A stretch of DNA of 63,420 nt, counting the filler, from Pelomyxa schiedti (lineage: Eukaryota; Protista; Evosea), in the NCBI GenBank assembly GCA_020536535.1. It is 9 parts of 9 records of this genome, joined end to end, with 100 filler letters (N's around TTAATTAATTAA, not from the genome) between each part and the next. Parts side by side here need not be neighbours in the genome. Positions count along the whole stretch, not along the records: positions 13,768 to 38,713 come from JAHLWZ010001051.1; 8 more parts are not named here. The stretch is one strand, 5' to 3'. A program made the position numbers and the translations under genes. The notes below the pieces were generated by a model, which saw only the letters and a program-made list of their open reading frames with translations, did not search any database and was not told the origin of the DNA. This document shows, piece by piece, positions 13,940 through 38,000 of the stretch; within the stretch, counting starts at the first letter, position 1; the number at the start of each line of letters is the position of its first letter.

Positions 13940-16900
13940 TCAGTGCTTGTTGTGTTTGGAGGAGGTAGGCGTGCTGGGTGTGGGGGATGGTGATGGCGAT
14001 GGCGATTGTGATTGGGCGATGAGGTCAGTGGGGAGTTGTGATGATGAGTGCCTCTCGTGCCTCAGGGAGTGGTGCATGCCCTTGCTGCTGTGTGAGTGCC
14101 GGTGGGTGGGTCTGTTCTCCACTGTGTTGGTTGCTGGTGATGTGGGTGTTGCCAGTGTTGGAATGCGGAATTGTGATTGTGGTTGTTGAACCGGTTGTTC
14201 TTGTGGGGGATTGGGAGTGGATTGTGGTGTCTGTGGTTGGTTAGGGGTTGGTGTTTGTGCATTCCCGGTTGTTGTTGTTTGTGCTGGGGTGGTTTGTGTT
14301 GATGTGGGTTGTTGAGTGGTGAGCCCCCCTACTGAAGGGGACCTGTGCCGGAGTGTTGGCTTTGAGTTCCGGGGTGTTGATGGGGTAGTGAAGGTGCTGG
14401 TGGTGGTGTAGCTGTCCGTGGATGTGGGTGTTGGTGTGGTTGTGGTTGTTCCGGGCGGCTTTGCGGGGGATGGAGACTGTGATATTTGGACTGTGGATTC
14501 TATTGACATTTTGGATGTGAGTGGTGTTGAGGGCGTTTGTTGCTGCTGCTGTTGCTGTTGCCGCGGAGTTCCTGGTGGTGCTGGTGAGCCGCCTCGTTTG
14601 CGGGGTGAATCGGGCTGCGGGAGTTTGGCTTGAGGAATTGTGAATGTGGGGAGAGGTGATGAGGACGAAGTGGTTAGTGCTCCTCCTGGCCGGGCTTCGG
14701 AAGGTGGTCTGTTTGGTGGTGTGCCGGGACATGCATTCATGTTGAGTTGTGATGCCCGGGGTGTTGAGACGCTCTCCCGTAGGTTTCCGCTGAATTCTCG
14801 GAAGAGGTTGTCTCTTAGTGAGGCACTTTCTCTCAGTGTAAGTGATTTTGTCCTCTCGTGACGTCTATTAGGGCTGAAACCAAGTTGGTAAAATGAAGAA
14901 GAGTGGGAATATAACCTGGGCTTCTGAGTCAGAGCGGTTGTGTCTGCTGGGAGCCTTTGAATCGGAAGGTTGGGAATCCGTGATAGTGCCATCTGAAATG
15001 CTGCAGCCAAGTCGGCGGCAGTAACACTACTACAAGGAGTGGTAAAAAAAAAAAAAGTACTACCGCAAGCTTATTATACCTTGGGTCGGCTGCTGGTTGC
15101 ACATTCCCGAGCGCCATTTTGAACCTGTTATATCTGAGAAAAATATATAATCTAAGGGGAATAACATTTGCAATTCTCTTGCCATTGCTTTTTCTTTTTC
15201 AAGATGTTCCTGTAACTTAACGTTGTTAATAAGTGAGTGATCTACACAAACTAAATGAAGGAAATTACTTACAGCTGTTTCCATAAGGCCGGAAGCCAAT
15301 TGAGTCTGCTTTTTTGCTTGTTTTAGTTCCCCTTTAAGCTTGGAAGTTTTTTTTTGCTCTTCCTGGAGTTGATCTTTGCATCGTTGAAACTCCTCCTGAA
15401 GCTGAAAACCATATAAATTGGAAATGTAGCGCGGTGTAGGAGGATGAAAGGAAACCTGGGCAAGAGACTGTTGTGCACCCTCTTTTTCAGTCTTCAGCCG
15501 GCTGGCTTCCTCTAATTTGGATTTCTTCCAACGGGTTAGGAGGGTATGTCAAAAGGAAATGATTTGCAAACCAAGGAAGTATTTTCCTTCTGAAGTTGCT
15601 GTGCTAATTCTTCAGACGCCTGGGCTTTCTTAGAATTTGATTTGGCACGCGCTTTATATTTGCTGGCCTTCTCTTTCCATTCTTCAAGGTCGACATTTTG
15701 CACGGAAAGAAGCTCTTGAACCTGGAAGCAGAAATTGATAAGCAAGGTGAATTTGGATGTAAAATCGTACTTCGTCAAGTTGCGTATTTAGTCTGGACAT
15801 CTGTTGAAATAAGACATCCTTTTGCCTGGTTATTTCCTCTAATGGTTCTTGCTTTCTTCTGGAAAAATCCTCAACTTGCAAGGCTAATTTCTTGTTCTCT
15901 TCCAGTAGCTTTTCCTTTTGAGTGGCGAACTCCTCCATTGATTTTGTGTGCTCCTCGTTCTGCCGGGATATGTCCTCTTTCTGCTTTGAGATTTCTTCAA
16001 GTTGTTGTGCCAACTCTTTGTTCTGTTTGAATAAGCCCTCGTTGTGCCGTACAAGTTCTTCGTTGTGAGTGGAGAGGGCAACTTTTTGAGCATAGATATC
16101 TTCTTTTTCTTTCTTCAATTCATTTATACGATCCAGTTGTTCCTTGTTGAATTGCAGTGCCTCCTGGAAAATGAGTAATATAATAGAACATGTTGAGATG
16201 GAAAATACATCATTGAACGCGGAAGTGGGTAAAGGAGAACTCGTTTTTCGAGGAGAATCGGGAGGAATAGGAATGGGCTTATCTTCAGGTAGAGTAGGTG
16301 AGGCATTGGGCTGTGAGGCCAGCTGAGAATTGAATGATGCAGTTCCATCCTAAAAGAAAAGGAAATTCTTGAATTTTGATACTTGAGGAAATTAACACAC
16401 TTTTGAACACGATTGTACCAGAGGCACAATTGGAATTGAACTGCTAGTTGCATTCCTTCTGGTGTGATGGCCATGATGATGTGAGTGTGGCCGTGTCGAA
16501 CTTATTGTTGCATATTGCGGCCCTTCCCTGTGTAGTTTTAACGGATTTTCAGGAAAGAAACAGTTGCATACAACCAACCATGAACAGATCTTGGTCTTAC
16601 CTGTGTACCATTTAGATTAGCGATTGCACATATGTTTTACCAGGCGATCGGCATCGATACTGCTACTACCACCGCTGCGAACACTGGCACAGGAGTCTTC
16701 TGAAGCTTCACTTCCAGGTACACTTGATATATCAGATACACTGTGCGTTTTCTGCATAAAGGGTTCATATTGTGATTCAGAATAGTAACATACATGATCC
16801 AAAGGGGAGTACGTTGGCATGCCTATTTCAGAAGAAACTGACTGCCGTCTATGCCGATTCTCTGAAGAGGTTAAGTGGTATTTTGCGTGGGAGTGATCAA

Positions 16901-19900
16901 TACCTCGATAATCTACAGAATCCTCTCTACCAAAGATAGAATTCGTGATTTCACTCTAGAGGAAGGGTGGATAAAGGTAATTATTATTGATTAACACACC
17001 AAAATATCAGGCGGAGAGCCAGAAAATGCGGACTGGCAATCTGCAGGGGATGAAGTGTTGGAAGCGCGTGTACTGTGGATTATATGTTCTGCATTATCAC
17101 ACTTTTCCTCTAGGCTTTGCTTCCACTGTTCAAAACATCCTTTGGAGAATGAAAACAACAAAAAAAAAAAGACACGCACTTTCATGTTTAGCATGAAGTA
17201 CAGCCATTTCTGGTGGTATCAGTTTCCGGTGGACTTGAATTGCATCGAAAATAGCATGTTTTTGAGAATGTAAATGTTTCTGTAGTGGATTTAAGACTGA
17301 GAGTTCTAGCAAGTAATGCAATAACCATTAACTTTACAACAAGTAACTGTTGGGAGGGGTTGTTTTCAATGAACTCGCGACTCAAAAATGCACTCATGTA
17401 GTGTTTTACGCCACCACTCACAGCGGCATCCACAACACCTATAAAACGTCATGGAAGTATGGGACATAGTACGAGTTGTACCAGAAATGGACATGGACAG
17501 TGAATTAATAGACTGCGGAGTGGGTTTCAAATTGGCATTTTCTGCTTTCCGCTGGATATCTCGTGTTTTCGCTTTAAGTGTGTCACAAGCATTTTCAAGA
17601 GGACATTTCAATATCTTTTTCTTATTAGAACATAATTATTTTCGAAGGTTGTGAGACCTCTTTCTCTTTTATTATCTCTTGGCGCCTGGTAAGTCCAGGA
17701 AAAGACTGTCCTGTAACAAGGTATGTCTGTGATATCCAAAGTTTCTGCAGAAAGTAACTGAGAGGTTATGAAGAAAAATATCTCACACTAAATTTCTCTT
17801 CCTCGCTAAGAGGTGTCCCAGGCACCACATCCTTCATGAAGGGCTTAGTGTACACAAACACTTTCAAATTCAGTTGGTTGTAGAAAGCACGAGATTTTGG
17901 TGGTGCTACAGAAAATTAGAACACAAATTTATGCAAGCTAACAACCATCTTCAGGTATGTGTGGCGGGTGGTATGGGAGGTCTAGAGTATTTGCCAATGC
18001 AGGGGTCAAGATAACTGGGTCACATGCATGAACATATATACCTGTAAGAAATGGCTGTGATAAACAAAATGAACTCAACTAATAGTCTCATACATTCACC
18101 CTCCCGTTCGGCTGTGTGGGTGTATATTATCTTTGCTTTGTCAAACCGTAATTGGAGTTTCTTGACAAAAGTGAGGATCCTTTCTCCTTCATCCCCTCTC
18201 GCAATGAATTTCTTATTCTTTTTTTAAAGAGAGACTTAGTTAGCTGCCAACAACAAATTGTTGCAGAAAACCTCCACATTCTTTCCAAAAAAATCGCATT
18301 TTCCGGTGAAGTCTAATTTGAAATTAAATATACAGAAACGACAGAAAATTACGAACCTACGAAAAAATATTGTTCAAAAAGTCTGTCATGTGTTTGCAAG
18401 TATTTGCTGTACGTTTCCTTCAGAGTCTATTGAATTGTGAATTAAGGTGCTTCTCAAACGGAAAATAACCATAAGCCCAGCTAATTTTGCTTCCAACTTC
18501 AGTGTGGCAGCATTACCAGAAAAATGAATGTTTGATACTTTGACTAGTAGAGATGGAAGGGGTGACTTCGGGGAAACTACTGACGATGCCCGTGTAGGGG
18601 GATCTCCCTCCTTTCCTTCGGATGCCTTTGAAGAAGGCAATCCTTTAGAAAGTTGAACTCTCAGAACCTCCATATGCTCAAGGGCCCATTCCCAGTACTT
18701 TCCTTCACCAAAATGTGTCATAGCAGATCTTAATATCTGCTCCTGGAACAGTGTGACTTTGAGTTTGTTTTGACACAGGAAGGACCTTGATATTTTGTTC
18801 TGGGCCGCCGCCGGGCGTTTCAAGTCTATCTTCCCAAGTATACAATTTAGACTTTTCTAATAAACACAACCCAGCTTCAATGTGAGCCTTCAGGGTTGCA
18901 TACATCTTGTACAGGTTGTCCAGCTTTTCCGTGTATTTTTGGACATTGTTGGTGTACTTAAAGTATTCCTTTACACGGAAATTAAAATAAGAGTAGTAAG
19001 GAACTAACCTTGCCATTAGTTTAAGCAAATAATCTGCTTTATCATGCTCAAACTCAGGAGTTGGCAATATGAGAGACTCTACAACTTCGACGTCTTTAAG
19101 GCAAGACCCATTAAAATGTTCTGTAAAAAGAACTTAGAAGCTTCTAAGTTACTGTGTTTACAGGAAGCAAACTTTGTTGGAAGTACAACTGCCTCCATGT
19201 AAGTTCTTTTAAAACGGTTATAAGACGGGATGCAGCTGAGGAGGTTTTGCCCACCACAGTCTTCCTATTTCATCTTTTGTGACACAGTGCTCATCAACGT
19301 GAAAAAACCTTACCACAAAGTCTGGTCTATGCTAGTGTCTAAGCTTGCAAGTCTTAATACAGTGCATGTAGAGGCCATTGCCATAACCTCAGGAAACGCC
19401 AAGAACGATATAATCTTTGAATTATTCCTTAGGCCAAAATTGTGCACCCAACCGCATGTTTGTAGCCACCACAGCAATAATAATATTATTCTGCCATACC
19501 ATGCCACGCCACCACAATACATCATACACACATACAAGCACCACCATAAAGCACACCTTAACCAAAGCCGCGTAAGGCAGGTCAATAAGCTCGGGGTCCT
19601 CCTTCACACCACAACCCACTCCTCCTCCTCCTCCTCCTCGTCCCATCAATGACGATGATGATGACGATGGGGAGGAACCAGGCCTAGGTGTGGTGCCCGC
19701 GAACGTGGGCGATGACACCAGCGCCCCCCCAGGGCCAGGGACAGGCCGGGGCCGCCCCGTGGGGGGTGCTGATGGCGAGGGTGACGGCGAGGGAGAGGGG
19801 GAGGGGGACGGGGGCGGGGGCGGGACGGGCCTGGTGAACACCCCGCGGACGCCGCCCCCCACCTTGGCTGCCACCGACACGCCGGGCCGCGGGGAACCCG

Positions 19901-20153
19901 TTGGGTGGCCCACCCCGGGGGTGGGGGCGGGTGGCGGCGGCGGCGCGGGGGGCGGCGGAGGGGGCTTGTTTGGGGGCGGGGAGCTCGTGGGCGGCGTGGA
20001 CGTGGACGCCGAGGGAGAGGGAGAGGAAGAGGAAGAGGAGGGGAGTGTGGATGTAGACGTGGATGATGGTGGTGATGACGAGGGCGAGGACGAGGGCGCT
20101 CGGTTTTTGTCGGCTGAGCCGCCTCCTGTTACTGCACCAACAAATGCCCTCAT
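13940..20153 (-). CDS. F-box + DOCK DHR-2 (DOCKER) Rho-family GEF + coiled coil + low-complexity tail
   Basis: The spliced F-box reads LIDLPYAALVK|IISFLAFPEVMAMASTC..DQTLW (19590-19313). DHR-2 motifs follow: KYTEKLDNLYKM..HIEAGLCLL..LYTW, AMTHFGEGKYWEWAL, FVYTKPF, SFPGLTRRQEI, PLENACDTL, NSLSMSISG..VDAAVSGGVKHYMSAF. Coiled-coil exons lie at 15060-16118 and the terminal ORF at 13940-15010. Continuity through the distal exons was traced by eye. Confidence 0.78.
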
Positions 20154-20785
20154 ATGAGTAGTAGTGCCTTGTGTCTTGTTGTTGCTGGGGGAGTGGGTGA
20201 CTGCACCACCGTGNNNNNNNNNNNNNNNNNNNNNNNNNNNNNNNNNNNNNNNNNNNNNNNNNNNNNNNNNNNNNNNNNNNNNNNNNNNNNNNNNNNNNNN
20301 NNNNNNNNNNNNNAGGGCGCTCGGTTTTTGTCGGCTGAGCCGCCTCCTGTTACTGCACCAACAAATGCCCTCATATGAGTAGTAGTGCCTTGTGTCTTGT
20401 TGTTGCTGGGGGAGTGGGTGACTGCACCACCGTGGGTTCTTGGGGCCTAACAACAAACCAACCCGAAAAAGTCGATCGTCGCTGCTCGCTTCGACTACAA
20501 AGGGAAAAAAAAAAAGAAGTGTTTCCTGGAAATCATTTCGGGATACCAGAGACTGAAGTGAAAGTTCACAGACCACATGTCGTTTTGTTGCTGATTGTAT
20601 CCCTCCGCACCACTACTCTCCACATATGACTGTCAATTACATTTGCACCTCCGAAGGTGAGTGCATAACCGCGCACAACTATGGTGAACTGCTACAGCAA
20701 CCGACGATCCAACTGCTCAAAACACTGCGATCACGACACTTACTTTGTGGCAAAGAAATACGGTTTTTCTGCTTACAAGTAATCA

Positions 20786-22075
20786 ATGGAAGGAAGACCA
20801 ACTATTACCCTGTTGGTGGGCGCACGAGCACAATTTGTTGCCCTGGCGTGCGCCACGATTGTGGGGCGGTGCGGTGTCTCGAGCCCAGCACGCGTTTTGG
20901 CCTGGACGCCCTCGGTTGTTTCTGAGCTCGGCCGGTCCTGGATCGCCGGCGCATCCCGAGTTATGGGATGCACCCTTCATCTTCCACCATCGCCCCACGA
21001 TCCCACATTCACAATCAAAATGGCCCATTTGTTCATTGGTGTGAGTGTGACACTGGGGGTGGTCTGGTGCAACTGCTGGGACAGAGGCGGTGGCACTGAC
21101 AACGGAATTGGGTCTGGGAGTGAAGATTCTCAAGGATTGGGGTCGCACTGCTGGTTTGGTGGCGTTGGTGCTGTGATTTCTGGAAACTCGGGGGATTTAG
21201 GAGACGACAGGTTTGTTGGGTTGAATGATGAGGCTGGTGGTGTTTGTTGCGTGATTGACAGACGTGGGAGGGTTCTAGCAAGGTTGGAGGGTAAGGTAGA
21301 CAAGGAGGCCTTTGCGGTAATTGCATGCAACAAGAAGTGGGTGGTAAGAGTGGAGACAGGTGAGTCCCCTTCGTTAATGCTGTGGAATGTGACGAGGGTG
21401 ATGACCCCGCGTTGTGGTGATCCACCTCCAGTGTGCAATGGTGTAAAGGTGGAAAGCATTGTACACATGAGGGGAATGGGTGCCAAGTTCCCTCGGTTCA
21501 ATGATCCTTGTGGTGATGAGCTTGCTTTGCTGGGGAGTGCAGAGGGCTCCATGTGCATTTCTTATGTAGACCTGCAAAAGAGCATTGACACTGGTGTGCC
21601 AGTTGTGACTAGGCGCCATTTGATCCCGCATCCCACCCCTGTCGACTTTCTGTGGGATTCACCTGACACCGTTGTTACAATGCATCAGACTGGAATGGGC
21701 TTCAATTTCTACAGCACCAAGACAGGCATTCTCCACAAGTTCCCCACAACAAAGTACAGGTTCACCGGCATGGTCCATCCAGCATACATAACAGCGAGGC
21801 TGACTAATGCGGAATGCAAAAGAGTGTACCAATCCACGGGTTCAATCGCAGAGATATTCAGGGGTTCAGCCCTTGAGAAGCCATGTTCAGTGATAGAGCG
21901 CCAGGAACCAGCTGCGAATTTGCCGGAAGTGTCCACCAACAGAAGCCTATTCGCAACACCAAACTCCAACATTGAGGGCACACTGGTGATTCCAGGTAAA
22001 TATCAGACCTCAGCGACCATCCACGACGCCATCACAGGCACTTCCCTCCTCGTCCTCACAGTCACCTGGTCTTGA
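20786..22075 (+). CDS. Intronless orphan-family protein (RxQFxAL...RCGxxSPA N-terminal motif; beta-rich C-terminal region)
   Basis: Clean 429-aa ATG-to-TGA ORF. It shares the N-terminal motif with four other loci here, and internal motifs (VVID.R, ACNxKW, xVDxxxS) with 61205-62284. Confidence 0.8.
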   Translation: MEGRPTITLLVGARAQFVALACATIVGRCGVSSPARVLAWTPSVVSELGRSWIAGASRVMGCTLHLPPSPHDPTFTIKMAHLFIGVSVTLGVVWCNCWDRGGGTDNGIGSGSEDSQGLGSHCWFGGVGAVISGNSGDLGDDRFVGLNDEAGGVCCVIDRRGRVLARLEGKVDKEAFAVIACNKKWVVRVETGESPSLMLWNVTRVMTPRCGDPPPVCNGVKVESIVHMRGMGAKFPRFNDPCGDELALLGSAEGSMCISYVDLQKSIDTGVPVVTRRHLIPHPTPVDFLWDSPDTVVTMHQTGMGFNFYSTKTGILHKFPTTKYRFTGMVHPAYITARLTNAECKRVYQSTGSIAEIFRGSALEKPCSVIERQEPAANLPEVSTNRSLFATPNSNIEGTLVIPGKYQTSATIHDAITGTSLLVLTVTWS

Positions 22076-25575: not shown

Positions 25576-27081
25576 TCAAACCATACGCCTGATGAGCTTG
25601 TTGATGAGCTCCTCTCGGTTGCCACCATCACCACCCTCGGTGTAAAGGATGCTCTTGCGGCGGAAGCCTCCCTTGGGGTTTTTCAGCTTGAATGGAGCAA
25701 GGAACCTGTGAACCGGTTAGGATAAATTGTCATGGTGAAGCGGAATGTTGGCGAGTCGTAGATAGACGTTCGAGGGTTAGGGGGGGATTCTTATACTTGT
25801 TGGCGGAAGTGAAGTGCTTGCCAACGGTGTAAATCTCGTGAATGAGGTCCTCCATACAGATAATGTCGTGCTTGCCGAGGTGGGCAGAAATCATTTTGTT
25901 ATCGGTGATGCGTTGTCTCTGGCGGTGAATTCGGCAATAGCCGCGCTTGTACATCAAGGTTCGTACAGCAGACAAGTTGGGATATCTGAAAATGTTCGGA
26001 TAAGGACAACGGGATAATAGGCCAACCGCATACCCAAATGCAACGTAGGGCTGAACGAGTTGGAGCATCTGAAGTGTGGCCTTGTTGACACGGACGAAAG
26101 AGGCATTGTTAATCTGCTTGAGTCGGAGAAGTTTCAGGATCTTGCGGGTTCGGGGGGTGAGACCGCAAATACTACAAGAGATTAGAAAAAAGCCATGAAA
26201 CAATTGTGGAGGCGGGACAACCTACCCCTTCAGGCGAATCACAAAGATGAGCCTGGCATCGGGCTCGCGGAAGAAGTTACCACTGAGCTTGGCGTCTCGT
26301 CTTTTCTGTATAAGAGACCTGCGCAACTGTTAGCATATAAAACTGCTCTGCTTTTGAGAAAACAAACCGCTCTCGTGCTTTGTATTCCTTGGCCCACTTG
26401 GCAGCCCTTCCAACGAGTTTCTTTTCGGTTTCAGCCTGTTTCTGTAAAAATGTTAGACAAGAAGTCAATGAAGAATTAAAAAAAGCCTTACCTGAACTTT
26501 GGTCTTTTTGGCGGCCCTGGTTTTTGCGAGTCTTTCAATTCGAGCCTTGACGATCTTTTTGATGCTCTCTGGCATGGGGACAACGCTTTAATGCGAACGT
26601 CAGACAGTAGAAGGGGGAAAAAAAGGAAAACTTACTCGGCTTTCTTCTTGTCGGCGGGCTTTGCCTCTGTAGCAGGGGCAGCGGCAGCGTCCTTGTTCTC
26701 AGTAGCAGGAGCTGCAACCTTGGCCACCTTCTTGGCAATCTTTTTGTGTTTGCGAGTTGGAGCAGGAGCCTTCTTCTTCTCCACAACTGGCTTCTTCTCC
26801 TTCTTCTTCGCCTCTCCCTCCTTCTCCTTCTTCTCCTTGGGGAGTCTCTGTTTTTTGGTTGGCATCCTCTTCTTGTCCTTCTTTTCGGCGGTCGTTGTGG
26901 TCGTTGTTGCGGTCGCTGGTGCGGGTGTTGCGACGGGAGCGGCTGCGGGTGCCTCGTCCTTCACCGCCGTCGGTTTCTTCTCAGCGGGCGCTTTTTTCTC
27001 CGCTGGTTTTTTCGCGGCCGGCTTCGCTTTTTGTTGCTGAGGCTTCTCGGTCGTCGCTTCCTTCATCGGTGTGTCGGCCAT
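25576..27081 (-). CDS. RPL7: 60S ribosomal protein L7 (uL30) with ~150-aa Lys/Ala/Pro-rich N-terminal extension
   Basis: Core motifs: [83 protein letters not shown]. Confidence 0.93.
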
Positions 27082-35019: not shown

Positions 35020-38000
35020 CTACGAACCAAGTACAAGCATGTTCTGTTCCTTGAGCCAGGTGCATGCCCTCACTGCTGAGTCCTTCTTGGCATCAGATCT
35101 GGAGGGATGTTGTACAGACACGAAGACGATTTCCTTGCCATTCACAGACAGACCCAGGTGGCACTGGCATGTCATTATTGGTGATGCCGTTGCTGTACCG
35201 GTACTGGTACTGGCAGTTGTTACATATACCGGCTTCGGTGGTGTTATTCTGCCCCTTGACGATGTAACGGTCCGGTTCAGCAAGTCCTCGGCGTTGTATT
35301 TGTCAATGACCACAGAGTCAGTGTGCAGTCTGTCGTGCCTTGTAGGTGAAAAGACTTGCTGTCCAAGCCTCTTCAGTGCCAGAACTGCGGCTTCGTTTTC
35401 GGCTTCTTCTGTTGTGGGATGTGGGCCACTTGTTACTGTAACCGGTCCTGAAGATAGTTCCACTGTCACTGAGGAACAAAACAGCGGAAGGTAACTAGGA
35501 GGCCTTGTATAGGGTGTGTCAGTGGGATATCATTGGATGGTTAGACAAACCTTATCCCCTTGGATTGGCAGAATTTCGTCAGCCGTATCTTAGGGTCCAA
35601 TGTAAGTTCCTCTGGTTCATTCGGTTCCGTTCGAGTGGGATCAAGTCCATTCTGAGTTCATTGAATTGGCAATATTCGGTAAATGTGGGCGTTTTTTGAC
35701 AAAACATACGAAAATTATCAAATCCCGTTTCATTAGGTCTTTCACTGCAGCTTCCAGTGCAAGTCTTTTGGCATCACTCTTTCTGATGGCCGCTGATGCG
35801 TAGTACGACAAATATTTCCTTAGGAGCATTCAGTACTTCTAAACAAGGAAGTTCATACCCAACCGTGATGACACATGTAAGGTCTTGAACAGTGATCTTT
35901 GGTTCTATTTCGAGAAGGTATGAACAGGTTTGCCGTAAATGCTAGAAAGTGTGGGTGTAGTATCAATCAGATTACTTTGACGAAAGGAGGAACCTGCTCG
36001 GAGTTTGTAAGAAGCTGCTCTTTCCGCTCCAGGGGATACTGCTTATTGAGATTGGCTGTTTGGTCCAAGATTGTCTGCCAGAAAGATTGTACATTGGAAG
36101 GCACAGTATTGCAATTGTCAATGCCGGTGGAGACAATTTTAACAGCGAGTTTCATTGCTTGCTCTTTTTGTTTCATCTTCTGCCATCGTCCGGCTTTTTA
36201 AGAATAAGTGGTTGTGTTGAGAAAACATATTTACCTTCCATCTGATGACATATTCCAATAAACCTTTAAAAAACCCGAGTTAATACGACTCAGGAAAGGT
36301 ACATTGTTTACCTACTACCCGCTTTTCTTGCCCTTCCTCGTGATTGCACGAAAGAAGCGGTGGAAGGTATTTTGTCGTATCTAATCACCAAGTTACAGTC
36401 AGGTACATCCAATCCTTCCTCAACAACAGATGTAGCAAGTAATCTGGTGTATATTACTGCCTGACTAAAAGCTTCTTATCCTACAAGCGAAAGGCCCCTT
36501 CTCGGAACTGTCTCAGTACATCCTCTTGAACAGTAGGGGACATCCCCTTTTCGGAACGCCCTGTGATTCCCTGTGGAAGGAGTGTGCGCCAAAAGATTTA
36601 GTTTATCTTTTACCTGCATCTGTATGCTCAGGTAAGCAAGTTCTTTTTGAATAAGAGTCACATTGAGTCGTGTGCCCACAAATAGAAGTATCTTGTGGCC
36701 TGTGGGAACCTAGGAAAGAAATGTCTGCTTTGGGTCGTTGTTTTAGTTGTGTACTAAAGATAGTATATCTCTCAGAGCATCCAATTTTGCAGATTGAGTG
36801 GGCAGCTGAATATTTGAATCAAGAAACAATGCCGAGCGAATTTCATTTTCAATTTGGAGGAAGAGCTGTGCATCATCAGGGAAATGTAAACTCCACTCGG
36901 GAAGTTTATCACGGATGAAGCTCCAACTGTGGTAGCGAATGAATGAAAGAAAAAAAACGAATTCAAGTACGCATGACTGCAGGAAACATCATCAACAATG
37001 GCACGGGCTTTGTAGAGTGTTCGAATTATTGCTAGTTCTGGTCTATCTAATCTTTGGGACTTCACCCAAGGATAGTAATCTTGGCAAGTTGAGTTCTGTG
37101 ACAAAAAGATCTTAGTACAAAATAATCTTCACTAGTACCTTTGACCAGCTCAGCCTGTTCAAACAATCATTGATGATTTTTTCAATTACCCTCAATAGAT
37201 TTGTTGATGGCTCATCCATGACAACTTCGTAGAGATCTTCCTAGAGAAACGTGACTGACAGTCAACGGGAGAAAAAAAAAACTTGAATTAGTTGACTAAA
37301 AGAGCTAGTATCTGCGGTGACAACAACAGCACGAAGATTTCCACACATGCGAAGAACCTGTACCAGGGTCTCACCTAAAGTATCACCTGAGGCCAGACTG
37401 GCAGTGAGACCTAGAATCTTTGACTGGTTAGGGAAAATGCAAGGATTGATGCTTCAACCATACATCAGGTGCAGGAAATCCATGATCGAATATATTGTGC
37501 CGTTCTCCCATGATTTCATTGAAAGGATGGTCTTTGGTTGTGTGATGGCATTCATCAAGGATCTATTTGTAGCCTGAGGTGTTAATGGACAAAAAAAAAA
37601 AAAGGAACCAGAAAAGGGTACAAGAAGGGAAACAGCTGATAGCAGTTGTGGATTCTTTTTCAGTTCGTTTTTAAGGCTTCCTGCAGTGATTACAACAACA
37701 TCAGTTGTACTGATAGTAAGATTCCAGCATTTAGAGGAAGTAGAACCCCCGTAGAGTGCTTCTACTCTTTTATTGACACAGTTAAGAGGAGAAGAAAGTA
37801 TCTACCTCATACCGCAAGTTACATTGTTCTGAGAACTGACTGGCCTGCTGCATTGACAGTGCCACATTCTGGCAAACAAATAAAACTTTCCCCAGTGAAC
37901 AACAGCCAAAATCAAGTGCAATAACAATTACTTTTTTTCAAAGGGTGTCTTTTGTGGTGCCACTGAGCCAGCCTTATTGCAATGAGAGTCTTTCCAGTAT

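What the first reader, a model, noticed from the sequence alone, without database searches (positions are those of the whole stretch)
13940..20153. F-box fused directly to a DOCK DHR-2 GEF domain
Seen: splicing canonical introns joins LIDLPYAALVK to IISFLAFPEVMAMASTC..DQTLW, a textbook F-box. About 50 aa later the DHR-2 lobe A begins, and the catalytic-loop region VDAAVSGG is present. There is no DHR-1/C2, SH3 or ARM region upstream, only a Pro/Ser-rich leader. Established: DOCK GEFs normally pair DHR-1 with DHR-2, and F-boxes bind Skp1 in SCF ligases. Inference: an SCF adaptor that uses a GEF fold to capture (nucleotide-free) Rac/Cdc42 for ubiquitylation, or a GEF controlled by SCF assembly, linking Rho signalling to proteolysis.
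Basis: partly seen in the sequence, partly recalled or inferred. Interest (0 to 1): 0.75.

Follow-up and report, generated by a model that had tools for sequence, protein, structure and literature searches.

The report
Amoeba F-box–DOCK (DocC-type) Rac exchange factor
This gene from the anaerobic amoeba Pelomyxa schiedti really does put an F-box (a handle for a ubiquitin ligase) directly in front of a DOCK-type Rac-activating domain, but the same design already sits, unstudied, in public records of other amoebae, including Dictyostelium docC.

Summary
On the minus strand, 19646-13940, lies one 29-exon gene, GenBank KAH3742760.1, "DOCK family protein", Pelomyxa schiedti. Its order is a weak F-box, a roughly 40-aa conserved linker, a complete three-lobe DHR-2, a Ser-rich spacer, a long coiled coil and an S/T/P/Q-rich tail. 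There is no DHR-1/C2, ARM or SH3.

The DHR-2 is solid:
- Pfam lobe C scores 53.5 bits.
- The AlphaFold model matches the DOCK2 DHR-2 at target-normalised TM 0.80-0.82.
- The catalytic valine is kept.

The F-box is not "textbook". It scores 20.7-21.4 bits against a threshold of 24.3. It is nevertheless homologous (hhalign E 4e-8) to the above-threshold F-boxes of relatives in Dictyostelia and Planoprotostelium that have the same architecture. On a DHR-2-only tree these relatives form one group with Pelomyxa (support 99).

D. discoideum docC is already listed as a predicted F-box protein (PMC9485057, Fig. S3). I found no functional study of it.

RNA contigs confirm 14 of the tiny introns (40-57 nt) exactly, but they do not cover the F-box junction. 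That junction uses the gene's only long intron (142 nt), and its position is conserved in two paralogous loci.

Verdict: a real and ancient fusion. It is a new member of an annotated but uncharacterised kind. Whether it is a substrate receptor or a regulated GEF is untested.

The parts
13940..19646 (-). Coding region of the gene as in GenBank KAH3742760.1 (P0001, 1439 aa): 29 exons and 28 GT..AG introns. Of the introns, 27 are 40-63 nt and one is 142 nt. The stop codon is 13942-13940.
   Evidence: A protein-guided walk of P0001 along the window reproduces it exactly. Of the 15 RNA-contig joints, 14 coincide with the model and one differs by 6 nt.
19647..20153 (-). In-frame Pro/Ser/Gly-rich leader from the upstream ATG at 20153. 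It is either an N-terminal extension or a 5' UTR; this is unresolved.
   Evidence: The frame is open from 20153 into exon 1. GenBank starts at 19646. There is no RNA coverage. Paralogous loci also have an upstream in-frame ATG with a low-complexity leader.
19557..19586 (-). F-box, first part (residues 21-30, LIDLPYAALVK), at the end of exon 1.
   Evidence: Pfam F-box-like and F-box start at residues 21-22 of P0001.
19415..19556 (-). Intron inside the F-box, 142 nt, phase 0. It is the only long intron of the gene.
   Evidence: The paralogous loci L001 and L002 have an intron at the same codon boundary; I measured it as 103 nt in L001. No RNA read crosses it in the runs laid.
19314..19414 (-). 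F-box, second part (exon 2, IISFLAF...DQTLW; residues 31-64).
   Evidence: It aligns with the above-threshold F-boxes of the orthologues.
19173..19264 (-). Exon 3: the conserved linker between the F-box and the DHR-2, containing the W-R-Q-L-Y-F-Q motif shared with the orthologues.
   Evidence: Alignment A1. The hhalign match runs through it. The flanking introns are 49 and 52 nt.
18388..19106 (-). DHR-2 lobe A (about residues 100-310). It is helical and very divergent, and it includes a low-confidence Ser/Pro insert.
   Evidence: No Pfam lobe A hit in P0001, but the region aligns with lobe A of DOCKs in A1. It is part of the model that matches the full DOCK2 DHR-2.
17603..18375 (-). DHR-2 lobe B (about residues 315-480), beta-rich.
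   Evidence: Pfam lobe B scores 17.9 bits, below the gathering score of 26. Exon-level PDB hits fall on DOCK2 DHR-2 residues 166-202 and 270-296, in colinear order. Model pLDDT is mostly above 85. The introns here are confirmed by RNA.
17057..17602 (-). DHR-2 lobe C (about residues 481-619; Pfam match 506-603).
   Evidence: Pfam DHR-2_Lobe_C scores 53.5 bits against a gathering score of 26. The exon hits DOCK5 1558-1596 and DOCK2 1533-1566. The introns are confirmed by RNA.
17410..17433 (-). Motif VDAAVSGG of the alpha10 insert. Val527 (17421-17419) aligns with the invariant catalytic valine of DOCK GEFs.
   Evidence: The role of the valine is taken from PMC10152721.
16236..17056 (-). Ser-rich, low-complexity spacer.
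   Evidence: RNA-supported open frame. No Pfam hit.
15082..16235 (-). Long coiled-coil region.
   Evidence: Only weak hits to coiled-coil families. Sequence.
13943..15081 (-). S/T/P/Q-rich C-terminal tail.
   Evidence: RNA contig of run X2 covers 14170-15401 with four spliced joints. No Pfam hit.

Best explanation
This is the Pelomyxa schiedti copy (KAH3742760.1) of an Amoebozoa-wide 'DocC-type' family of DOCK proteins. In this family an N-terminal F-box and a conserved ~40-aa linker replace the whole DHR-1/ARM/SH3 front half, and a complete three-lobe DHR-2 follows directly.

Shown here:
- It is a single gene.
- The DHR-2 fold is present and the catalytic valine is retained.
- The N-terminus is homologous to genuine F-boxes.
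- The fusion appears to have one origin, shared with Dictyostelia and Planoprotostelium.

Inferred:
- The DHR-2 is an active exchange factor for a Rac-type GTPase.
- The F-box docks the protein on Skp1 and so places it in an SCF ubiquitin ligase.
- The most likely consequence is that SCF assembly controls the amount or location of the GEF. F-box proteins are commonly turned over by their own ligase.
- A second possible consequence is ubiquitylation of whatever the DHR-2 holds.
- Lobe A and the C-terminal coiled coil would make the protein a dimer.
For: Identity and gene structure:
- The exon search found the identical GenBank protein and a 72%-identical paralogue.
- P0001 maps exactly onto the window.
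- RNA contigs support 15 joints in an unbroken frame from lobe B to the tail.

DHR-2:
- Pfam lobe C scores 53.5 bits.
- Three separate exons hit the DOCK2/DOCK5 DHR-2 in colinear order.
- The AF2 model has pLDDT above 90 over much of the DHR-2. The top 19 Foldseek hits are all DOCK DHR-2 structures. The best is DOCK2-Rac1, E 4.6e-25, TM 0.80-0.82 normalised to the target.
- GVVDAAVSGG is conserved and includes the valine that is invariant and essential in DOCKs (PMC10152721).

F-box:
- Pfam E 2-4e-4 in all three Pelomyxa copies.
- hhalign of Pelomyxa N-termini against orthologue F-box plus linker gives probability 94.9%, E 4.3e-8, over 76 columns.
- The orthologues score 31-45 bits, above the gathering score.
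- The family profile hits FBXW7 at 6e-11, Skp2 at 2e-8, and FBXW8, FBXL5 and FBXL2.
- The fold model has three helices, and nearly all of its top 50 matches are F-box chains bound to Skp1.

One transcript:
- Only 49- and 52-nt introns separate the F-box exon from lobe A.
- A single phmmer alignment to the Tieghemostelium protein spans F-box, linker and lobe A.
- Intron positions are conserved in the paralogous loci.

One origin: the nine F-box rows lie on one side of a branch of a DHR-2-only tree, SH-aLRT 99.
Against: - The Pelomyxa F-box is below both Pfam gathering scores. Alone, it hits the Skp2 F-box only at E 1.1.
- It is about 33% identical between the Pelomyxa paralogues, against about 65-69% for the aligned F-box-DHR-2 region, so it may be decaying.
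- The fold model of the F-box has only pLDDT 62-80. Its alignment contains true F-boxes, which biases it.
- No RNA contig crosses the F-box intron, which is 142 nt against 40-63 nt for the other 27 introns.
- Pfam lobes A and B are sub-threshold or absent.
- No Skp1 binding, GEF activity or GTPase partner has been tested. D. discoideum docC carries no mark as a Skp1 interactor in the supplement row I read.
Confidence: 0.6

Rival explanations
1. Substrate-receptor reading. SCF(DocC) would use the DHR-2 as its substrate-binding module. It would hold nucleotide-free or GDP-bound Rac and present it for ubiquitylation, so the protein would lower Rac rather than, or as well as, activate it.
For: The layout is that of a classical F-box receptor: the F-box at the N-terminus, a short conserved linker, then the binding domain. 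DHR-2 domains dimerise through lobe A (PMC10152721). Several SCF receptors are also dimers (my own knowledge). The fusion has been kept across three amoebozoan lineages.
Against: Nothing here shows ubiquitylation. The catalytic valine is needed for exchange. By my own recollection it is not needed for binding, and all nine members keep it, which argues that exchange itself is selected. No Rac degron or lysine geometry can be assessed with these tools.
Confidence: 0.15
2. Relic F-box. In Pelomyxa the N-terminal motif no longer binds Skp1. The protein would simply be a DHR-1-less Rac GEF, positioned by its coiled coil and tail.
For: The scores are sub-threshold (20.7-21.4 and 17.0-17.6 bits). 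The conserved tryptophan of the C-x-x-W position is replaced by Leu, and there is a 4-residue insert relative to the orthologues. The F-box diverges faster than the DHR-2 between paralogues. The Pelomyxa branch on the tree is long, 1.6.
Against: The L-P, the hydrophobic ladder, the Cys and the terminal L-W are kept in all three Pelomyxa copies. The intron-exon structure and the open frame are conserved between paralogues.
Confidence: 0.2
3. Gene-model artefact. The F-box exons would belong to another transcript or be non-coding, stitched on by the predictor through an atypically long intron.
For: The 142-nt intron is the sole outlier among 28. Its acceptor scores low in a matrix trained on the confirmed introns: 3.6 bits, for a total of 10.4 against 12.6-18.5 for confirmed introns. 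There is no RNA coverage. The GenBank model is imperfect elsewhere (see Noticed in passing).
Against: The same split, at the same codon and with an intron of about 100 nt, is found in two paralogous loci. Orthologues from distant amoebae have the F-box at the same distance from the DHR-2. In Heterostelium the F-box and the start of lobe A lie within one tblastn segment. There are fewer than 200 nt between the F-box exon and lobe A, which leaves no room for a terminator and a promoter.
Confidence: 0.05

Closest known systems
Dictyostelium discoideum DocC and its dictyostelid and Planoprotostelium orthologues (P0004, P0011-P0015)
   Same: They share the order F-box, conserved linker, three-lobe DHR-2, and lack DHR-1/C2, ARM and SH3. 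The alignment is colinear across all three parts. They lie on one side of a branch of a DHR-2 tree. docC is listed as a predicted F-box protein (PMC9485057, Fig. S3).
   Different: The Pelomyxa F-box is degenerate (sub-threshold, 4-residue insert, Trp replaced by Leu). Pfam does not detect lobe A. Pelomyxa has a long coiled coil and an S/T/P/Q tail. Sequence identity is only about 30%. The equation of docC with P0011's orthologue rests on the near-identical F-box string in the supplement, not on a full-length comparison.
Canonical DOCK-A/B GEFs (DOCK180/DOCK1, DOCK2, DOCK5)
   Same: The DHR-2 fold matches (target-normalised TM 0.80-0.82 to DOCK2-Rac1). The alpha10-insert motif with the catalytic valine is present. 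The best PDB sequence hits are from the DOCK-A subfamily.
   Different: There is no SH3, no ELMO-binding helical region, no ARM and no DHR-1/C2. Reviews describe DHR-1 plus DHR-2 as the constant core of the DOCK family (PMC5499878; PMC10152721).
ECT2L and Acanthamoeba F-box Dbl RhoGEFs
   Same: An F-box is fused to a Rho-family exchange domain. The family F-box profile hits the ECT2L chain 11xu_A1 at E 4.6e-6. F-box is listed among the domains joined to DH/PH in Acanthamoeba (PMC5499878).
   Different: The catalytic domain there is DH-PH (Dbl type), which is unrelated in fold to DHR-2. This is an analogous fusion, not a homologous one.
SCF(FBXL19)-Rac1 and Cul3-BACURD-RhoA degradation pathways (my own knowledge, not checked here)
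   Same: They are precedents for cullin-RING ligases that ubiquitylate Rho-family GTPases, some in a way that depends on the nucleotide state.
   Different: The receptors there are LRR or BTB proteins, not a GEF fold.

Membership tests
DOCK family (DHR-2 GEFs) | DHR-2 lobe C recognised above the curated threshold | tested here: met
   PF20421 scores 53.5 bits against a gathering score of 26, residues 506-603.
DOCK family (DHR-2 GEFs) | Complete three-lobe DHR-2 fold | tested here: met
   The AF2 model has mean pLDDT 75.1, and above 90 over much of the DHR-2. Foldseek to DOCK2 DHR-2 (3b13_A, 2yin_A) gives E 4.6e-25 and TM 0.80-0.82 normalised to the target. Pfam lobe B reaches only 17.9 bits and lobe A gives no hit.
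DOCK family (DHR-2 GEFs) | Invariant catalytic valine (nucleotide sensor) in the alpha10 insert | tested here: met
   Val527 in GVVDAAVSGG aligns with the V of VDPAVMGG in DOCK5 and with other DOCKs. Its role is described in PMC10152721.
DOCK family (DHR-2 GEFs) | DHR-1/C2 lipid-binding domain upstream of DHR-2 | tested here: not met
   No PF14429 hit in P0001, P0002, P0003 or the six orthologues, whereas canonical DOCKs in the same search carry it. Only about 100 residues precede the DHR-2.
DOCK family (DHR-2 GEFs) | Nucleotide-exchange activity on a Rac/Cdc42 GTPase | not testable with these tools
   Needs a biochemical assay.
F-box proteins (SCF substrate receptors) | F-box recognised above the curated threshold | tested here: not met
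   PF12937 scores 20.7-21.4 bits against 24.3. PF00646 scores 17.0-17.6 against 20.5. The orthologues do pass, at 31.5-45.5 bits.
F-box proteins (SCF substrate receptors) | Homology of the motif to established F-boxes | tested here: met
   hhalign of Pelomyxa against the orthologues gives probability 94.9%, E 4.3e-8. The family profile, which includes Pelomyxa, hits FBXW7 at 6.4e-11 and Skp2 at 2.3e-8.
F-box proteins (SCF substrate receptors) | Three-helix F-box fold | tested here: inconclusive
   The model shows three helices at pLDDT 62-80. The best Foldseek E-value is 0.41, but nearly all of the top 50 hits are F-box chains in Skp1 complexes. The model's alignment contains true F-boxes.
F-box proteins (SCF substrate receptors) | Binding to Skp1 | not testable with these tools
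   Needs a pull-down or a complex prediction. No multimer tool was available.
DocC-type F-box-DHR-2 clade of Amoebozoa | Colinear F-box, conserved linker and DHR-2, grouping with the other members on a DHR-2 tree | tested here: met
   A single phmmer alignment runs from Tieghemostelium query positions 23-243 to P0001 27-260 and continues to 602. See also alignment A1. On the tree, the nine F-box rows lie on one side of a branch with SH-aLRT 99 (quick tree, midpoint root, 20 rows).

The most novel reading that the evidence does not exclude
The DHR-2 of DocC-type proteins serves as the substrate-recognition module of an SCF ligase. A GEF fold would be reused to select Rac in its nucleotide-free or GDP state for ubiquitylation, so that one dimeric protein couples activation and destruction of the same GTPase. 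This arrangement would have arisen in an early ancestor within Amoebozoa.
Probability: 0.12. Interest if true: 0.75.

Novelty: new member of a known kind. Interest (0 to 1): 0.4.

Why it matters
Reviews describe DOCK GEFs as having a fixed DHR-1 plus DHR-2 core with few accessory domains (PMC5499878, PMC10152721). This family breaks that rule in at least three amoebozoan lineages. It drops DHR-1 and puts an SCF-docking motif in its place.

If the F-box is functional, the family is a direct physical link between Rac activation and cullin-RING ubiquitylation. That link can be tested in a tractable model through Dictyostelium docC. In the literature I searched I found no functional study of docC.

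The Pelomyxa gene itself adds the Archamoebae to the distribution. It also shows a degenerating F-box, which is useful for asking which part of the fusion is under selection.

Tried and rejected
- Pfam on raw ORF pieces of the window gave no DOCK or F-box hit, because the exons are too short.
- PDB phmmer on the exon at 17769-17915 and on the lobe A ORF gave nothing useful.
- An exhaustive path search over all GT..AG pairs timed out. I replaced it with pairwise segment linking using a matrix trained on the RNA-confirmed introns.
- I first proposed an in-frame 42-nt intron at about 18499-18540. I rejected it because the paralogue conserves the peptide ...LKLEAKLAG... across it.
- I considered a 40-nt intron at about 18973-19012. 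It breaks the frame and leads to a stop when paired with the one downstream intron I tried.
- Full-text searches for F-box plus DHR-2 plus DOCK, and for DocC plus Dictyostelium, found no paper that describes the architecture. Only the supplement of PMC9485057 lists docC.
- I sent no self-joined spliced protein to any search tool. The identical GenBank protein, retrieved through a single-exon query, was used instead.
- I ran no further search on looking outside Amoebozoa. each scored only the 8000 candidates that share most words, so absence elsewhere is not shown.
Full report
**What is there.** The finding lies on the minus strand of a eukaryotic piece, 13768-38713. Six-frame reading shows many short open segments rather than one ORF.

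Public runs place the DNA in a protist. Two single-cell RNA runs (X1, X2) and two DNA-like runs (X3, X4, which hold 0.94-0.99 of the sampled words) come from the same study.

Laying their contigs on 14170-20160 gave 15 listed joints. All are CT..AC on the plus strand, which is GT..AG on the minus strand, and each skips only 40-57 nt. Splicing the window at these joints gives an unbroken frame from DHR-2 lobe B to the C-terminal tail. RNA coverage is limited to 14170-15401 and 16208 to about 18169. The F-box region has none.

**Finding the gene's protein without joining exons myself.** Raw ORF pieces gave no Pfam hit. Three separate exons nevertheless hit the solved DOCK2/DOCK5 DHR-2 in colinear order:
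- DOCK2 DHR-2 chain residues 166-202, E 1.2.
- DOCK2 DHR-2 chain residues 270-296, E 1.3.
- DOCK5 1558-1596 and DOCK2 1533-1566, E 0.04-0.5.

I then searched one exon by reference (window:18786-19118:-, 111 aa) against the 1.84-billion-protein library. Only two proteins matched:
- P0001: 100% identity, 1439 aa.
- P0002: 72% identity, 908 aa.

The cluster look-up names them KAH3742760.1 and KAH3767385.1, 'DOCK family protein [Pelomyxa schiedti]'. P0001's contig is 24,946 bp, exactly the size of this piece. A third copy, P0003 (KAH3758542.1), shares P0002's cluster.

A protein-guided walk reproduces P0001 exactly on the window. It has 29 exons and 28 GT..AG introns. My own linking of open segments, scored with a matrix trained on the confirmed introns, reached the same junctions for the first four exons and for lobe B.

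The genome paper says the models were made with Augustus, PASA and EVM using transcript data, and that the assembly was scaffolded with an RNA-based scaffolder (PMC8887013).

**The DHR-2.** Pfam finds lobe C at 53.5 bits (gathering score 26), lobe B at 17.9 bits (below threshold) and no lobe A.

I folded residues 1-640 with a 20-row alignment (A1). The model has mean pLDDT 75.1, and above 90 over much of the DHR-2. All 19 Foldseek matches with E of 0.001 or better are DOCK DHR-2 structures. DOCK2-Rac1 leads, at E 4.6e-25 and TM 0.80-0.82 normalised to the target.

The motif GVVDAAVSGG (VDAAVSGG at 17433-17410) aligns with the alpha10 insert. Val527 sits where the invariant and essential catalytic valine of DOCKs lies (PMC10152721).

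**The F-box.** On residues 1-100, Pfam F-box-like gives 20.7 bits (E 3.6e-4) and F-box gives 17.0 bits. On residues 15-100 the scores are 21.4 and 17.6 bits. All are below the gathering scores of 24.3 and 20.5. Alone, the segment hits the Skp2 F-box only at E 1.1. 'Textbook' is too strong.

The decisive evidence is comparative. Word searches with P0001 and then with its best outside hit found proteins in these taxa:
- Tieghemostelium lacteum
- Dictyostelium firmibasis
- Heterostelium album
- Acytostelium subglobosum
- a EukProt taxon
- Planoprotostelium fungivorum

All carry F-box-like at 31.5-45.5 bits, followed 60-100 residues later by DHR-2 lobes. None has the DOCK C2/DHR-1, ARM or SH3 models that the canonical DOCKs in the same hit lists carry.

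Four further results tie the Pelomyxa motif to real F-boxes:
- A single phmmer alignment of the Tieghemostelium protein to P0001 runs through F-box, linker and lobe A.
- hhalign of the Pelomyxa N-termini against the orthologues' F-box plus linker gives probability 94.9%, E 4.3e-8, over 76 columns.
- A profile of the family's F-box hits FBXW7 (6.4e-11), Skp2, FBXW8, FBXL5, FBXL2 and the F-box-bearing Dbl GEF ECT2L.
- A fold model of the Pelomyxa segment has the expected three helices at modest confidence. Nearly all of its 50 best matches are F-box chains bound to Skp1, although no E-value is better than 0.4 and the input alignment contains true F-boxes.

**One gene or two?** No read crosses the F-box junction, so direct proof is missing. 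The indirect evidence is strong:
- The exon with the second half of the F-box is separated from lobe A by only one 92-nt exon and introns of 49 and 52 nt.
- The frame is open throughout.
- The linker motif in that small exon is conserved in the orthologues.
- The paralogous loci L001 and L002 have introns at the same two positions in and after the F-box. The first is long there too, 103 nt as measured in L001.
- In Heterostelium the F-box and the start of lobe A fall in one tblastn segment.

I put the artefact reading at about 5%.

**Origin.** On a tree built from the DHR-2 columns only, the nine F-box-bearing rows lie on one side of a branch with SH-aLRT 99. Pelomyxa sits on a long branch of 1.6. 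This was the quick method, with a midpoint root and 20 rows. The result fits one fusion event in an early ancestor shared by Archamoebae, Dictyostelia and Variosea.

**What is known.**
- Reviews describe DOCKs as DHR-1/C2 plus DHR-2 with at most an SH3 or PH domain (PMC5499878).
- Full-text searches found no paper that discusses an F-box-DHR-2 protein.
- The supplement of Boland et al. 2022 lists D. discoideum docC among predicted F-box proteins. Its F-box string is nearly identical to that of P0011. It is coded 'ab', and class b means predicted by BLASTp. The row carries no growth-stage or slug-stage mark.
- DockA, DockB and DockD have been studied. I found nothing on DocC.

The architecture is therefore on record but uncharacterised. 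The Pelomyxa entry is annotated only as a DOCK family protein.

**How it most likely works.** Shown here: a complete DHR-2 with its catalytic valine, an F-box-derived N-terminus and a conserved rigid-looking linker, with no membrane-targeting DHR-1. Everything else below is inferred.

The protein is likely a Rac-type GEF that docks on Skp1. I favour SCF-dependent control of the GEF itself, through turnover or placement. The reason is that the catalytic valine, which is needed for exchange, is kept in all nine members. By my own recollection it is not needed for binding.

The receptor reading, in which Rac is presented for ubiquitylation, fits the classical layout of F-box, linker and binding domain, and it fits DHR-2 dimerisation. 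I give it about 15%. A relic F-box in Pelomyxa gets about 20%, given the sub-threshold scores and the faster divergence between paralogues.

**Limits.**
- I sent no self-joined model to any search.
- The two word searches each scored only the 8000 candidates that share most words, so absence outside Amoebozoa is not shown.
- The coded run names were not decoded. The species name comes from the protein records.

Noticed in passing
window 20093-20434: A run of 100 N (20214-20313) is flanked by a perfect 121-bp direct duplication (20093-20213 = 20314-20434). This looks like two overlapping contig ends joined by a scaffolder. The assembly was scaffolded with P_RNA_scaffolder (PMC8887013), which may mean that RNA read pairs span this point.
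   Followed up: partly
window 16752-16793: The GenBank model removes this stretch as a 42-nt in-frame intron, which drops 14 residues (VCYYSESQYEPFMQ). The RNA contig of run X1 is continuous across 16637-16861, so the intron is either retained in that contig or mis-predicted.
   Followed up: partly
window 15210-15272: The RNA contig of run X2 splices 15216-15272 (57 nt). The GenBank model splices 15210-15272 (63 nt), which makes it two residues shorter.
   Followed up: partly
window 18969-19010: P0001 residues 132-145 (RLVPYYSYFNFRVK) are an insert absent from both paralogues and from all 17 other aligned DOCK sequences (alignment A1). A 36-nt in-frame GT..AG candidate lies inside it, so this may be an unspliced mini-intron. 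There is no RNA coverage.
   Followed up: partly
L001:460-7956 and L002:470-6587: P0002 and P0003 are near-identical copies on two contigs, either alleles or a recent duplicate. In L002 the model fuses the DOCK gene with the downstream MORN-repeat gene (P0003, 1263 aa, MORN 71 bits). In L001 the two are called as separate genes. Both contigs end about 460 bp upstream of the F-box.
   Followed up: partly
L001:304-486: An in-frame ATG lies 52 codons upstream of the annotated start of P0002 and adds a low-complexity leader plus ...LHFHLL before MLPDIV. The paralogue's F-box may therefore be longer at its N-terminal side than annotated.
   Followed up: no
window 25733-26203 (-): An ORF with a ribosomal protein L30p/L7e domain (Pfam 49.4 bits): a ribosomal protein uL30 gene.
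   Followed up: partly
window 35023-35469 (-): An ORF with a near-threshold Dicer dimerisation domain hit (22.8 bits against 23.7). It may be an exon of a Dicer-like gene.
   Followed up: no
window 20786-22075 (+): A 429-aa uninterrupted ORF on the opposite strand, divergent from the DOCK gene. It has no Pfam hit.
   Followed up: no
window 19783-19819: Many DNA contigs of runs X3 and X4 end or branch here. This is inside the GC-rich Pro/Ser-coding leader, so the stretch is repeated elsewhere in the genome.
   Followed up: no
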